A stretch of DNA of 63,779 nt, the filler included, from Octopus bimaculoides (Eukaryota), in the NCBI RefSeq assembly GCF_001194135.2. It is 5 parts of 5 records of this genome, joined end to end, with 100 filler letters (N's around TTAATTAATTAA, not from the genome) between each part and the next. Parts side by side here need not be neighbours in the genome. Positions count along the whole stretch, not along the records: positions 38,680 to 48,144 come from NC_068985.1; 4 more parts are not named here. One strand, given 5' to 3'. Below are positions 40,072-43,489 of this stretch, piece by piece (position 1 is the first letter of the stretch; each line of letters opens with the position of its first letter). Under the pieces are notes generated by a model. That model was not told the DNA's origin, made no database searches, and was given only the letters and a program-made list of their open reading frames with translations. The position numbers and the translations under genes are program-made.

Positions 40072-40129
40072 ATGATGTTGCAACAAAGCATTATATTATT
40101 ACTGTTCACAGTCATTTCTTACTCAAGTG
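40072..40129 (+). CDS. Signal-peptide exon of a putative Ig-superfamily gene (MMLQQSIILLLFTVISYSS + G, phase 1)
   Basis: Pyrimidine tract TTTATTCTTCTATTGCAG acceptor directly before ATG; hydrophobic core; perfect GTAAGT donor; phase matches next exon. Confidence 0.75.
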
Positions 40130-40769
40130 GTAAGTTGAATTTGATATATATTCAATTAACAGCACTCAAAGAGGTGACAATAGTTATTGAATTGAGTAGC
40201 AGAATTAATTTATCACCTGATTTTTAATACCATCATTCAACCCTTGAGTGCCTTTAGTGCAATCAAATCTAATGGAAGCATTTGAATCAGGACTTTAGCC
40301 TGGCTTGAAAGTAACAGCCCATCTTTTTCCCGCTTCCAGTTTTGGGGACCAGGAAGAGTTCATGAATGCCATTTTCCTCCTTTCTAACTGAGTCACATAA
40401 TAATGATACTAATAATTGGCACAAAAAAGGGTAAAGAATCCCTTTGGTTATGAATGACCATAGAATTGCACCTAGCAAGTTCCTTCCGAGGCACAAGTCC
40501 AGGCAAGGTTGTTTATGGAAAGAGAGAAAGAGAGAGACTGAAAAAGACAGTGAGTGGTGATGGTGTTCATTTTATGATTATAAATGCTTATCACATCGCA
40601 AAAAAAGTAGATAGATGGATACATACACACATTGTTAAATTAAAAGCGAAAGAGAGGAGGGACACAGAGGAAGTGAAAGAGAAAGTGAGAGACAGTAGAT
40701 ACATAGATCCAAAGAAAATTAGATAAATAGAAACATAAACACAAGTAATGGATGTCACTTTCACTTTTC

Positions 40770-41465
40770 GTTACCACACGAGGATAAAATTAACTTGCAA
40801 GTGACTGAGTACTCAACAGACATGCATATCATTAATGTAGTTCTCAGGGAGTTTCAGCTTCACACAGAATATGACAAGGCTGGCCCCTTTGAATTTCAGG
40901 TACAACTCATTTTGACCAGCTGAGTGGACCAGAGCAAGATAAACCTTCAAGTGGTTGGAAGAAAATGAAAAAAGATCCTATATAGGGGCAGGAAAATCTT
41001 TTTAGCCGTTAGGGCCACTATGGGTTTTAATCCAGTCCTAACAACAGCATTTGTGGATCTCACAGACCTGGAGGGCAAGCCTCAGATAACACCGATGCGC
41101 AAGCTGTTGTTCTCAGACTGAGCATGAGTCAAGGGCAAATACACAATGGAATAGCAATTATTTCATCTTAGCTTTCACTGCTTATGTTAAACACATGACA
41201 TTTTTGCTTTACAATATGGAACATTTCCTTTTCTTTCTCTTAAAAAATGGCACTCCATCGGTTATGACGAAGAGGTTCTTGTTTATATGATCAACGAATA
41301 GTCTTCTTGTAAAATTAATGTGCTAGTGACTGTGTACTCCACAGACATTCATACCGTAAGGTAGTTCTCAGGAAGATTCAGTCTCACACAGAATCTGACA
41401 AGGCTGGCCCCTTTGAATTACAACTATAACTCATTTTTGCCAGTTAGGTGGACTGCACAGCATAC
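40770..41465 (+). mobile_element. Two copies of SINE family 3 (40770-40930 and 41225-41465)
   Basis: Shared GTGACTG.GTACTC.ACAGAC...GTAGTTCTCAGG...CACACAGAAT.TGACAAGGCTGGCCCCTTTGAATT. Confidence 0.65.
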
Positions 41466-42059
41466 CGCAGGGTGTCATACTCATGAATTTATGATTGTGA
41501 GCCAAATAACCCCTAGCCACTGAGCTACATACCTTCACTCTCTTAACCATAGAGAAAAGGACTAAAGTGACAGAGACAGAGAAAGGAAAACCTCAGTCAT
41601 TTATAACGACAATTAGACTAAAATACAATCAATCTTTTCTAGCTTCTTTACTTTTAACAATGAAGAAGAGGGAAAGACATTTAGTAATGAATAGAGGGAA
41701 AGTCTTTCAGGTGTTCATGTTTTTATTCTGAGAATTCTAGAACGATCAACTGTTACTTCTTTCTTCTTTCCCCAACCCCCAGTACTTATTTGCCTTCTTT
41801 CATAGTTCTTCGTGTCTTTTAGTTGGTGGGGAAAGACCATATTTTTTCAGGCACATTTAACATTTTCTCTACAAACTACAAACAAGCCTCCCCATCTTCC
41901 TTTTCTTTTTCATACAAAAACTAATGCAAATTTCAAATGAGGTATAGCTGTGAAAAGAACCCAGAAAAATGGGTAATACTCCCTATAAAATGGGTGGAGG
42001 AGAAAAGTTGCCAACAGGTGGCTACACAAAATTCAATTCTATATTTTAAAGAATGTGTT

Positions 42060-42362
42060 CTACTATAGCCTCAGGTTGACCAAAGCCTTGTGAGTGAATT
42101 TGGTAGACGGAAACTGAAAGAAGCCCATCATATATATATAAAATATTTTTATGTGTGTGTGTTTGTCCCACCACTGCCATTGTTTGACAACCAATGCTGG
42201 TGTGTTTGCATCCCTGTAACTTAGCTGTTCGGCAGAAGTGACTGATAGAATAAGCACCAGGTTTACAGGGAATAAGTCCAGGGGTCGATTTCTTCAGCTA
42301 AAAGATGGTGCTCTAGCATGGCCACTGTCAAATGACTGAAACAAGTATAAGAATAAAAGAAT
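42060..42362 (+). mobile_element. SINE family 2, 3' two-thirds
   Basis: GGTAGACGGAAACTGAAAGAAGCCC...GCATGGCCACTGTCAAATGACTGAAACAAG-TATAAGAATAAAAGAAT. Confidence 0.85.
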
Positions 42363-42630
42363 ACCAGAACATTCCGTACCACTAAACCAAGAAGGTTCTT
42401 TGAATATGTACAAAGTATTTTAAAGCTAAATAGTAATTGCGTTTACATTTGCATAACTGAAATATTTTTGTTGGATTATATACTTATCAGCTTTATACAT
42501 CTTTCTATATTCTGTAACTGCCATAATATAGAAACAGTTCACATGGCACCAGTACACAGTTTACAGATGCTTACATTTTTCATGTTTCCTGTGAATTTTT
42601 CACAGGTCCAGCTAGTAATTATAATTATTA

Positions 42631-42664
<34 letters not shown>

Positions 42665-43168
42665 CATCATCATCATTGTTGTTGTTGTTGTTGTTGTTGT
42701 AATTATTATCATCCTTTCTACTAAAGGCACATGGCCTGTAATTTGGGGAGAGGAGACTAGTCGATTACATCAACCCCAGTATTTCACTGGTACTTAATGT
42801 ATTGACCCTTAAAAGATGAAAGGCAAAGTCGAGACACTAAACCAGCTGTTTTGAGGTGGAAGGGGTAGTTAATACTGTTGACTTTGGTAATTACCTGAAA
42901 TTTTATTTTATCGACCCTGGAAAGACAGAAAAGGCAAAGTTCTGGATTCTGGTTCAAAGATTCTTTTTCTTTCATTAAGCTTTTTCATTAAAAAAAAATA
43001 ATTCTTTTCCTTAATAATCAGTATACATACATAGAGGCAGTTCTCCAACATTTTATTCATTGTAATGTCTAAAACAAACTAAAAATACCTAATCACCCTT
43101 CTTAATTTTTTTTCCATTGATTTTAGTTCTTTATTTGTTTATTTTATATTTTATTTTATTTTTTCCAG

Positions 43169-43489
43169 AAAATGAAATTGTGCCACATGAATCAACCATA
43201 AGAGCTATTTTATCCAAACCAGTCACTCTTCAATGCAATTTTCCTCGTGTTAAGGTCTCTTGGAAATCTACAAATAATACCTATTTGTTCTCTTATATGG
43301 AATGTGTGAACAGTTTTCCTCACTCTACAGAGAATAAGCTTTTTCAAGGAACAAAAAGTAACTGCTCTAACAAACACAAGGTTACTTTTCTCACTTTCCC
43401 TTTTATCACCAAGGAACATGACAAAATTCAAATTCGTTGTAGTCGGCAAGGAGCTACTTCAGATCTCATATTCACAATAAAAGTTATAA
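43169..43489 (+). CDS. Ig-like (V/I-set-like) domain exon, 321 nt, phase 1-1
   Basis: T-rich tract TTTTATTTTTTCCAG acceptor and GTAAGT donor; open frame with PVTLQC (B strand), KVSW (C strand), IQIRC (F strand), FTIKVI (G strand); unique sequence among repeats. Confidence 0.8.

What the first reader, a model, noticed from the sequence alone, without database searches (positions are those of the whole stretch)
40072..43489. Cryptic secreted or surface Ig-superfamily gene with a divergent four-cysteine domain
Splicing the two exons gives MMLQQSIILLLFTVISYSS-E-NEIVPHESTIRAILSKPVTLQCNFPRVKVSWKSTNNTYLFSYMECVNSFPHSTENKLFQGTKSNCSNKHKVTFLTFPFITKEHDKIQIRCSRQGATSDLIFTIKVI. Splice sites are consensus, and the phase-1 signal exon plus phase 1-1 domain exon is the classic IgSF layout. 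The domain keeps the B-strand Cys, C-strand Trp and F-strand Cys but replaces D-x-G-x-Y-x-C with HDKIQIRC and adds two Cys (possible second disulfide) and NNT and NCS sequons. I do not recognise it as a known family; it may be a lineage-specific recognition, immune or adhesion molecule.
Basis: partly seen in the sequence, partly recalled or inferred. Interest (0 to 1): 0.75.

Follow-up and report, generated by a model that had tools for sequence, protein, structure and literature searches.

The report
Octopus fast-evolving Ig receptor gene start
The two exons are real: they encode the signal peptide and the outermost, unusually fast-changing immunoglobulin-like domain of a membrane receptor gene found so far only in octopuses and the argonaut, and its function has not been studied.

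Summary
Exon 40072-40129 and exon 43169-43489 have consensus splice sites, phase 1 and 1-1, and give the quoted peptide.

Open-frame length alone is not significant. Homology settles it. The piece is collinear, introns included, with an Octopus vulgaris chromosome locus whose gene models (CAI9722396/7, auto-named "kin of IRRE 1") use the same two exons. An Argonauta hians gene (GAB1602869.1, "uncharacterized protein") has the same exon layout.

The full protein in those species is signal peptide, four-Cys V-like domain (D1), two further Ig domains, a transmembrane helix and a tail with conserved YxxI, YxxM and YxxP tyrosine motifs. The window holds only the first two coding exons. The next exon should lie about 2 kb past the piece's end.

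Pfam does not detect D1. Structure models, of low to moderate confidence, match only V-type Ig domains. All four Cys, the Trp and an N-C-S sequon are invariant. The only sequence hit among solved structures is CD226 domain 2, which has the same four-Cys layout.

D1 diverges faster than its own introns (14.6% versus 7.3%; dN/dS about 1), while the signal exon is conserved. In O. vulgaris the D1 exon is triplicated.

Verdict: a genuine lineage-restricted IgSF receptor, a new member of a known kind.

The parts
40055..40071 (+). Pyrimidine tract and AG acceptor immediately upstream of the start codon. It implies one or more 5' exons outside the piece.
   Evidence: The sequence ttattcttctattgcag|ATGATG is identical in O. 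vulgaris. Argonauta has tttttcttggtag|ATGAAG. O. vulgaris model P0001 joins two upstream mini-exons here.
40072..40129 (+). Signal-peptide exon (58 nt, ends in phase 1): MMLQQSIILLLFTVISYSS plus the first base of the Glu codon.
   Evidence: Translation is. The hydrophobic core at residues 6-15 has a Kyte-Doolittle peak of 3.5. It is 18/19 identical to O. vulgaris, with 6 synonymous and 1 non-synonymous difference. Argonauta has an equivalent 55-nt exon ending in phase 1, with a near-identical donor GTAAGTTG.
40130..43168 (+). Intron 1 (3039 nt), full of interspersed repeats and a trinucleotide microsatellite.
   Evidence: It is collinear with O. vulgaris L002 47039-51555 at 7-12% mismatch. Repeats are listed.
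43169..43489 (+). D1 exon (321 nt, phase 1-1): a four-Cys V-like Ig domain. On the 107-residue domain numbering the key residues are C23, W32, C46, C66 and C91.
   Evidence: Translation is. Identity is 73% to O. vulgaris D1 and 37% to Argonauta D1, with all Cys, the Trp, YLFSY, SNCS and HD invariant. The AF2 model gives strands A' B C C' D E F G. Foldseek returns V-type Ig domains only. There are no indels or stops against three O. vulgaris copies apart from a 1-bp deletion in copy 2.
43123..44158 (+). Main part of the roughly 1.39-kb unit (D1 exon plus flanks) that is present three times in tandem in O. vulgaris.
   Evidence: blastn matches L002 at about 51.5, 52.9 and 54.3 kb.
44159..45232 (.). 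Stretch interrupting the unit: repeat copies plus two assembly gaps (N at 44539-44638 and 45168-45177). Further D1 exon copies could be collapsed here.
   Evidence: Gaps are. This stretch has no counterpart inside the O. vulgaris unit; only dispersed repeat matches were found.
45233..45528 (+). Tail end of the O. vulgaris tandem unit.
   Evidence: It matches L002 52578-52880, 53968-54266 and 55465-55771.
43490..48144 (+). Intron 2, incomplete. The next exon (Ig2) is not in the piece.
   Evidence: tblastn of the O. vulgaris and Argonauta proteins finds nothing beyond D1 in the piece. The piece ends at the equivalent of L002 58966, and the Ig2 exon is at L002 61052-61351.
46700..47750 (-). Decayed non-LTR retrotransposon (reverse-transcriptase remnant) lying antisense in intron 2. 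It is not part of the gene product.
   Evidence: RVT_1 scores E = 0.013. The multi-frame translation shows RT-like motifs broken by stops. It lies within the block collinear with O. vulgaris.

Best explanation
The two exons are the first two coding exons of a genuine, lineage-restricted single-pass membrane receptor of the immunoglobulin superfamily. The window's species is an Octopus other than O. vulgaris.

Shown:
- The exons, their phases and their splice sites are conserved in O. vulgaris and Argonauta.
- The piece is the orthologous locus of O. vulgaris CAI9722396/7.
- In both relatives the gene continues with an Ig2 exon, an Ig3 (I-set) exon, a transmembrane exon and several tail exons.

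Inferred architecture of the window's protein: cleaved signal peptide; membrane-distal V-like domain D1 with the canonical B-F disulfide (C23-C91) and a second one (C46-C66, joining the C'/C'' region to strand D, as in CD226 domain 2); two stalk Ig domains; a transmembrane helix without charged residues; and a tail with tyrosine motifs.

Inferred mechanism:
- D1 is the ligand-binding face. It is evolving under diversifying pressure: it changes faster than its own introns while keeping its frame, cysteines and core.
- Ligand-driven clustering leads to phosphorylation of the conserved tail motifs P-[IV]-Y-[AE]-E-I-G-Y-x-x-M and N-E-Y-L-x-P.
- From general knowledge of SH2 specificities, these are docking sites of the YxxI (Src-family), YxxM (PI3-kinase p85) and YxxP (Crk/Nck/Abl) types.
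- The receptor therefore signals by itself rather than through a charged-helix adaptor.

The divergence pattern favours a recognition role in an antagonistic or self/non-self setting (immune, allorecognition or reproductive) over a conserved neuronal adhesion role. No expression data were available.
For: - Relatives: an exhaustive phmmer search gave two hits, E = 6e-35 (O. vulgaris) and 4e-12 (Argonauta).
- Orthology: the piece 38973-48144 is collinear with L002 45673-58966, with noncoding mismatch of 6-12%.
- Splice sites and phases are conserved.
- Downstream exons in the relatives are mapped. Their Ig2 and Ig3 domains pass Pfam Ig thresholds.
- D1 invariants are listed.
- Fold: AF2 pLDDT 62.5 and pTM 0.53 with the Ig strand order. 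All top Foldseek PDB matches are V-type Ig domains, E about 1e-4.
- CD226 domain 2 is the only Ig hit among solved structures, E = 0.028 for the single sequence and 0.0014 for the profile, with all four Cys, the Trp and SNCS in register. That domain is described as having an extra disulfide.
- Signal exon: 6 synonymous to 1 non-synonymous difference.
- D1 exon against its flanks: 47/321 versus 66/901 mismatches, Fisher p = 2e-4, with 0 versus 56 gap columns.
- Non-synonymous divergence of 0.135-0.151 per site against 0.084 for locus-wide noncoding DNA, p = 3e-4 to 4e-3.
- O. vulgaris exon copies differ by 5.3% while their flanks differ by 0.5-0.8%, Fisher p = 1e-6.
- Variable residues tend to lie outside predicted strands: 22/60 against 9/47 within them, p = 0.055.
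- Tail motifs are conserved between Octopus and Argonauta in an otherwise diverged tail.
Against: - No transcript evidence was available for the window's species.
- The downstream exons are not in the piece, so a transmembrane anchor in this species rests on orthology alone.
- dN/dS of about 1 (0.86-1.13) is also what a decaying exon would show.
- Synonymous divergence in D1 is elevated too. Amino-acid selection alone does not explain the excess. Paralogous exon copies, gene conversion of the flanks or local mutation-rate differences could contribute.
- Noncoding divergence varies along the locus, from 0.059 to 0.116.
- The structure model has only low to moderate confidence and the alignment has three sequences.
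- The CD226 match is marginal.
- The SH2-motif reading is pattern matching, not a test.
- The O. vulgaris triplication could in part be an assembly artefact, with haplotypes placed in tandem.
Confidence: 0.8

Rival explanations
1. The gene is real in relatives, but D1 in this species is a relaxed or decaying exon (pseudogene or skipped pseudo-exon). That would explain why it changes at or above the neutral rate.
For: dN/dS is 0.86-1.13, and mismatches are spread evenly over codon positions at 19/14/14. One O. vulgaris copy (c2) carries a 1-bp deletion, so exon copies can decay.
Against: - The 321-nt frame is intact, with no indel against c1 or c3, while the 901 nt of flank has 56 gap columns.
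- Both splice sites are consensus and conserved.
- All framework residues shared with Argonauta are kept.
- The adjacent signal exon is under strong purifying selection, 6 synonymous to 1 non-synonymous.
- Divergence above the noncoding rate is not expected from relaxation alone.
Confidence: 0.08
2. It is a conserved homophilic or heterophilic cell-adhesion molecule of the Kirrel/IrreC (Neph) type, as the O. vulgaris database name suggests, working in tissue or synapse patterning.
For: The O. vulgaris orthologue carries the name 'kin of IRRE 1'. The multi-Ig ectodomain plus tyrosine-rich tail is a general adhesion-receptor layout.
Against: - There are three Ig domains, not five.
- The best solved-structure sequence matches of the full Argonauta protein are IL-1 receptor-like 2, titin, sodium-channel beta-4 and Dscam. 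No Kirrel, SYG-1 or Neph chain was listed at E <= 0.01.
- The C-termini (…EALIG, …QTYKK) are not class I PDZ ligands.
- No relatives were found outside octopods, whereas Kirrel is pan-bilaterian by general knowledge.
- D1 is fast-evolving.
Confidence: 0.07
3. It is a secreted, soluble Ig-domain protein: only the signal peptide plus D1, or D1 with further Ig domains, without a membrane anchor.
Against: D1 ends in phase 1 at a consensus donor with no in-frame stop at the exon end. Both relatives continue into transmembrane and tail exons. The piece stops about 2 kb short of the expected Ig2 exon.
Confidence: 0.04
4. It is a chance open frame with chance splice-like sites in AT-rich intergenic DNA.
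For: Open stretches of 137 codons or more arise in 10% of simulated pieces of this composition.
Against: Protein-level hits at E = 6e-35 and 4e-12, and conserved exon boundaries in three species.
Confidence: 0.01

Closest known systems
Octopus vulgaris CAI9722396.1 / CAI9722397.1 ('kin of IRRE 1', automatic name; chromosome OX597818.1)
   Same: It is the orthologous locus: collinear through introns, with the same signal and D1 exons and splice sites. The signal peptide is 18/19 identical and D1 is 73-75% identical.
   Different: - O. vulgaris has three tandem D1 exon copies, one of them frameshifted. The window assembly shows one copy.
- The deposited models are imperfect. They bridge the frameshift with an artificial intron, skip an intact Ig3 exon and add an N-terminal extension ahead of the signal peptide.
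- The name is not supported.
Argonauta hians GAB1602869.1 ('uncharacterized protein LOC115211591 isoform X1')
   Same: It has the same exon plan: a signal exon ending in phase 1 with AG directly before the ATG, a phase 1-1 D1 exon, and one exon per Ig domain. It keeps the four Cys, the Trp, YLFSY, SNCS and HD, and the same tail motifs.
   Different: D1 identity is only 37-41%. The gene is compact (15 kb against about 100 kb in O. vulgaris) and has a single D1 exon.
CD226 (DNAM-1) domain 2, PDB 6ISA
   Same: It is the only Ig domain among solved structures found by sequence. The B-strand Cys, the Trp, the two extra Cys, the N-C-S sequon and the F-strand Cys align in register. CD226 D2 is described as having a second disulfide besides B-F. 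CD226 is also a tyrosine-signalling surface receptor (general knowledge).
   Different: - The E-values are marginal (0.028 and 0.0014).
- CD226 is a two-domain protein known from vertebrates (general knowledge), and the matching domain there is membrane-proximal, not distal.
- Nothing supports homology beyond the shared Ig fold, so convergence on the same disulfide layout is as likely.
Diversified invertebrate and lower-vertebrate IgSF recognition receptors (arthropod Dscam1 exon cassettes, snail FREPs, fish NITRs) - comparison from general knowledge
   Same: The shared features are a fast-evolving membrane-distal Ig domain and, in O. vulgaris, tandem duplicated Ig exons whose coding parts differ far more than their introns.
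   Different: There are only one to three exon copies. Alternative use of copies was not shown, no fibrinogen or other effector domain is present, and no sequence relationship was detected.

Membership tests
Immunoglobulin superfamily, V-type domain (for D1) | B-strand Cys and F-strand Cys about 65-75 residues apart, with a core Trp in strand C | tested here: met
   C23, W32 and C91 of the 107-residue domain are invariant in three species.
Immunoglobulin superfamily, V-type domain (for D1) | D-x-G/A-x-Y-x-C motif before the F-strand Cys | tested here: inconclusive
   The Asp is kept at -6 in all three species: HDKIQIRC, HDNIQIKC and HDQMKILC. Gly is replaced by Ile or Met, and Tyr by Ile.
Immunoglobulin superfamily, V-type domain (for D1) | Match to a curated Ig profile (Pfam V-set, I-set, ig, Ig_2 or Ig_3) above threshold | tested here: not met
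   The 126-residue product has no hit at E <= 10. The best hit for D1 alone is Ig_3 at E = 0.073, 14 bits against a cut-off of 30.
Immunoglobulin superfamily, V-type domain (for D1) | Predicted Ig beta-sandwich resembling V domains | tested here: met
   AF2 with a 3-sequence alignment gives pLDDT 62.5, pTM 0.53 and strands A' B C C' D E F G. All top-50 Foldseek PDB hits are V-type Ig domains, with E down to 1e-4 and TM 0.5-0.65. Model confidence is only low to moderate.
Immunoglobulin superfamily, V-type domain (for D1) | One domain per exon, flanked by phase-1 introns | tested here: met
   The exon is 321 nt and phase 1-1. The layout is the same in O. vulgaris and Argonauta, and for the Ig2 and Ig3 exons.
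Type I membrane IgSF receptor (whole gene) | N-terminal signal peptide, transmembrane helix and cytoplasmic tail | tested here: inconclusive
   The signal-like exon is present in the window. The transmembrane and tail exons were seen only in the O. vulgaris and Argonauta orthologues and lie beyond the piece.
Kirrel / IrreC / Neph ('kin of IRRE') | Five extracellular Ig domains | tested here: not met
   There are three Ig domains in Argonauta and in the O. vulgaris locus: D1, Ig2 and Ig3.
Kirrel / IrreC / Neph ('kin of IRRE') | Sequence similarity to Kirrel/SYG-1 family members | tested here: not met
   The solved-structure sequence search with the full Argonauta protein lists IL1RL2, titin, Nav beta-4 and Dscam, and no Kirrel or SYG-1 at E <= 0.01. 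That such structures are in the PDB is from my own knowledge.
Kirrel / IrreC / Neph ('kin of IRRE') | C-terminal PDZ-binding motif | tested here: not met
   The C-termini are …NEALIG (O. vulgaris) and …SQTYKK (Argonauta). The requirement itself is from general knowledge.
CD226 / nectin-binding receptor family | Two V domains followed by a tail with an ITT-like YxN motif; vertebrate distribution | tested here: not met
   Only D1 resembles CD226 D2, and weakly. The architecture has three Ig domains. The family is filed as an analogue, not a member.
Dscam-like alternative Ig-exon cassette | Tandem array of duplicated Ig exons | tested here: inconclusive
   O. vulgaris has three copies, two intact. 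The window assembly has one, next to two gaps. Argonauta has one.
Dscam-like alternative Ig-exon cassette | Mutually exclusive splicing of the copies | not testable with these tools
   This needs transcript data.
ITIM / ITSM / ITAM immunoreceptors | [SIVL]xYxx[IVL], TxYxx[VI], or YxxL/I-x6-8-YxxL/I in the tail | tested here: not met
   By inspecting the tails, none of the tyrosines fits. The motifs are P-[IV]-Y-[AE]-E-I, G-Y-x-x-M, N-E-Y-L-x-P and N-V-Y-L-N-P.

The most novel reading that the evidence does not exclude
The D1 exon may be a diversifying cassette. The ancestral gene would carry several tandem alternative V-like exons: three in O. vulgaris, and possibly more hidden in the window's assembly gaps. 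These would be used singly or in varying number, with selection keeping their coding sequences different while recombination homogenises the surrounding introns. That would give a cephalopod a Dscam-like or MHC-like source of receptor variety in a gene family unknown outside octopods.
Probability: 0.1. Interest if true: 0.75.

Novelty: new member of a known kind. Interest (0 to 1): 0.42.

Why it matters
Non-self recognition in cephalopods is poorly characterised at the molecular level (my own knowledge). My two searches of the held papers, one for the gene identifier and one for cephalopod Ig receptors with ITIM motifs, found nothing.

This locus offers a concrete candidate:
- a surface receptor restricted to octopods;
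- an outermost Ig domain that escapes Pfam detection, changes faster than its own introns and is duplicated as an exon in a sister species;
- a signal peptide, a second Ig domain and tail tyrosine motifs that stay conserved.

If the diversifying pattern holds in more species and in populations, the gene would be a tractable entry point for asking how octopuses recognise pathogens, self or mates.

It also shows that the public O. vulgaris models and their name ('kin of IRRE 1') need correction.

Tried and rejected
- Pfam on the 126-residue product gave nothing. On D1 alone only Ig_3 appeared, at E = 0.073.
- Word-indexed protein searches with the product and with the D1 alignment found nothing. 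With the Argonauta protein the search found only itself. The index evidently misses the O. vulgaris proteins.
- Rfam and tRNA scans of the piece found nothing.
- tblastn for downstream exons (Ig2, Ig3, transmembrane, tail, and the upstream mini-exons) found none in the piece.
- The single-sequence AF2 model scored pLDDT 50, too weak on its own. It improved only to 62.5 with three sequences.
- Encoding-contig look-up failed for P0001 and worked for P0003 and P0002.
- Literature searches for the gene identifier and for cephalopod Ig/ITIM receptors found nothing.
- ORF length as evidence was rejected, because it is not significant.
- The Kirrel label was rejected on domain count, the absence of any similarity hit and the C-terminus.
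- ITIM, ITSM and ITAM readings of the tail were rejected by inspection.
- My first alignment of the region upstream of O. vulgaris copy c3 used a wrong start and gave inflated flank divergence. I redid it with matched unit boundaries.
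Full report
**Observation.** The piece (38680-48144) is AT-rich, repeat-laden animal DNA.
- Exon 40072-40129 is 58 nt. It lies between ...ttgcag and gtaagt.
- Exon 43169-43489 is 321 nt. It follows a long T-rich tract ending ccag and is followed by gtaagt.

The open frame alone proves nothing. It spans 137 codons, and 10% of Markov-simulated pieces of this composition contain one at least that long. Two longer open stretches lie in repeats nearby.

**Is it a gene?**
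- Pfam gave no hit for the product, and a word-indexed protein search found nothing.
- An exhaustive phmmer scan of 1.84 billion representative proteins returned exactly two relatives.
  - P0001: E = 6e-35, 75% identity.
  - P0002: E = 4e-12, 41% identity over residues 2-125.
- P0001 and its isoform P0003 are O. vulgaris CAI9722396.1 and CAI9722397.1, automatically named 'kin of IRRE 1'. P0002 is Argonauta hians GAB1602869.1, 'uncharacterized protein LOC115211591 isoform X1'.

I fetched both loci. The window piece from 38973 to 48144 is collinear with O. vulgaris L002 45673-58966, through introns and repeats, with noncoding mismatch of 5.9-11.6%. The window is therefore the orthologous locus of a different Octopus species.

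The signal exon and the D1 exon have the same boundaries and splice signals in O. vulgaris. In Argonauta the signal exon is 55 nt and ends in phase 1, with AG directly before the ATG and a near-identical donor, GTAAGTTG. Its D1 exon is phase 1-1.

The AG directly before the ATG in all three species, together with two tiny upstream exons in the O. vulgaris model, indicates that 'exon 1' is an internal exon. The transcription start lies far upstream of the piece.

**What the whole gene encodes.**
- In Argonauta the exons run in this order: signal, D1, Ig2, Ig3 (I-set), transmembrane, then four tail exons.
- In O. vulgaris the same exons are present over about 100 kb. They include an intact Ig3 exon with consensus phase 1-1 splice sites that the deposited models skip.
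- Ig2 and Ig3 pass Pfam Ig thresholds.
- The transmembrane helix has no charged residue.
- The tail conserves P-[IV]-Y-[AE]-E-I-G-Y-x-x-M and T-Q-N-E-Y-L-x-P between Octopus and Argonauta, although the rest of the tail has diverged.
- None of the tyrosines fits an ITIM, ITSM or ITAM. They fit the YxxI, YxxM and YxxP classes of SH2 docking sites (my reading, from general knowledge of SH2 specificities).
- In the window, tblastn finds only the signal and D1 exons. The piece ends about 2.1 kb before the position of the Ig2 exon.

**The D1 domain.** An alignment of the window, O. vulgaris and Argonauta D1 sequences shows these residues to be invariant: C23, W32, C46, C66, C91, YLFSY, S-N-C-S and H-D.
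- The canonical D-x-G-x-Y-x-C motif keeps only the Asp and the Cys.
- The NNT sequon is not conserved. The N-C-S sequon is.
- AF2 on the single sequence gave pLDDT 50. With the three-sequence alignment it gave pLDDT 62.5 and pTM 0.53, with strand order A' B C C' D E F G and a short turn-helix before strand F.
- By sequence, the only Ig domain found among solved structures is CD226 domain 2. E is 0.028 for the single sequence and improves to 0.0014 with the profile. All four Cys, the Trp and the SNCS sequon align in register.
- CD226 D2 is described as having a second disulfide in addition to B-F (PMC10053669).

I treat CD226 as an analogue, not a relative.

**Evolutionary pattern.**
- The signal exon differs from O. 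vulgaris at 6 synonymous sites and 1 non-synonymous site.
- D1 has dN/dS of 1.13 against copy c1 and 0.86 against copy c3, and mismatches are spread evenly over codon positions.
- Yet D1 has no indel or stop, while 901 nt of adjacent intron carries 56 gap columns.
- The D1 mismatch rate of 14.6% is twice that of its flanks at 7.3% (Fisher p = 2e-4).
- It also exceeds the locus-wide noncoding rate of 8.4% (p = 1e-4). Non-synonymous divergence per site, 0.135-0.151, is above that rate as well (p = 3e-4 to 4e-3).
- Variable residues tend to lie outside predicted strands, notably after C46 and in the F-G loop (p = 0.055).

In O. vulgaris the D1 exon with about 1.1 kb of flank is present three times in tandem, with a unit of about 1.39 kb.
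- Copies c1 and c3 are intact. Copy c2 has a 1-bp deletion.
- The flanks of the copies differ by 0.3-0.8%, but exon c1 differs from c2 and c3 by 5.3% (17/320 against 4/767, p = 1e-6). Of the 22 c1-c3 mismatches across the unit, 17 lie in the exon.
- The changes are split between the two copies when polarised with the window sequence.

Synonymous sites are elevated too. The simplest combined reading is that coding differences are kept apart by selection while the introns are homogenised, or that the exon copies being compared are older than the flanks suggest. Relaxed constraint alone does not give divergence above the noncoding rate together with an intact frame. Regional rate variation and possible haplotype stacking in the O. 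vulgaris assembly remain caveats.

The window shows one D1 copy. However, the unit is interrupted at 44159-45232 by repeats and two N gaps, so collapsed copies cannot be excluded.

**Comparison with known families.**
- The automatic name 'kin of IRRE 1' is not supported. There are three Ig domains, not five. No Kirrel or SYG-1 match appears among solved structures. There is no PDZ-type C-terminus.
- The protein is a member of the immunoglobulin superfamily by fold, exon plan and cysteine-tryptophan core. D1 fails the curated profiles.
- No relative was found outside octopods, and no paper mentions the gene.

**Verdict.** These are the signal and N-terminal V-like exons of an uncharacterised, octopod-restricted IgSF surface receptor. 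The receptor most likely binds a ligand through a fast-evolving, doubly disulfide-bonded D1 and signals through tail phosphotyrosines. It is a new member of a known kind, since predicted orthologues already sit in databases. The excess of exon over intron divergence and the exon triplication in O. vulgaris are the features worth following up.

Noticed in passing
L002 (O. vulgaris) 51556-51876, 52947-53266, 54331-54651; window 43123-45528: The D1 exon and about 1.1 kb of flank are triplicated in tandem in O. vulgaris. The flanks are 99.2-99.7% identical, but the exon of copy 1 differs from copies 2 and 3 by 5.3%. Copy 2 has a 1-bp deletion in a T run.
   Followed up: yes
window 44159-45232 (N at 44539-44638 and 45168-45177): Two assembly gaps and repeat copies sit exactly where the O. 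vulgaris tandem unit is continuous. Further D1 exon copies could be collapsed or missing in this assembly.
   Followed up: partly
L002 71159-71482: This is an intact Ig3 (I-set-like) exon with consensus phase 1-1 splice sites, 50% identical to Argonauta Ig3. Both deposited O. vulgaris gene models omit it. The models also bridge the c2 frameshift with an artificial intron and prepend 24 residues from two upstream mini-exons (L002 10001 and about 16320).
   Followed up: partly
window 46700-47750, minus strand: A decayed non-LTR retrotransposon reverse-transcriptase remnant (RVT_1 E = 0.013, several frames with stops) lies in intron 2. It sits within the block collinear with O. vulgaris, so it probably predates the species split.
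   Followed up: partly
window 42054-42363 and 38978-39064 (inverted): An abundant interspersed repeat with at least nine further copies in the 119-kb O. vulgaris locus. Two copies in opposite orientation bracket the signal exon region.
   Followed up: no
window 43778-43901 / 43942-44065; 45532-45740 / 46312-46521; 46129-46277 / 46522-46670: SINE-like tandem pair and local segmental duplications inside intron 2, at 81-91% identity between copies.
   Followed up: no
window 38960-38990, 42625-42705, 45190-45250, 48040-48144: Microsatellites: (TA)n, (ATT/ATC/GTT)n, (CATA)n, then (GT)n, (TCTA)n and (TA)n at the piece's end. Some of the long mechanical ORFs listed in the piece run through such repeats.
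   Followed up: no
L002 104288-104344 and 108268-108324: The tail exon encoding the N-x-Y-L-x-P-x-S-V-N-S-L-K motif is present twice in O. vulgaris. Its protein therefore carries two copies of this tyrosine motif, against one in Argonauta.
   Followed up: no
L001 1-3732 (Argonauta): The upstream neighbour of the Argonauta gene is a large WD40 beta-propeller protein (MABP1/WDR62-like Pfam hits). I did not check synteny with Octopus.
   Followed up: no
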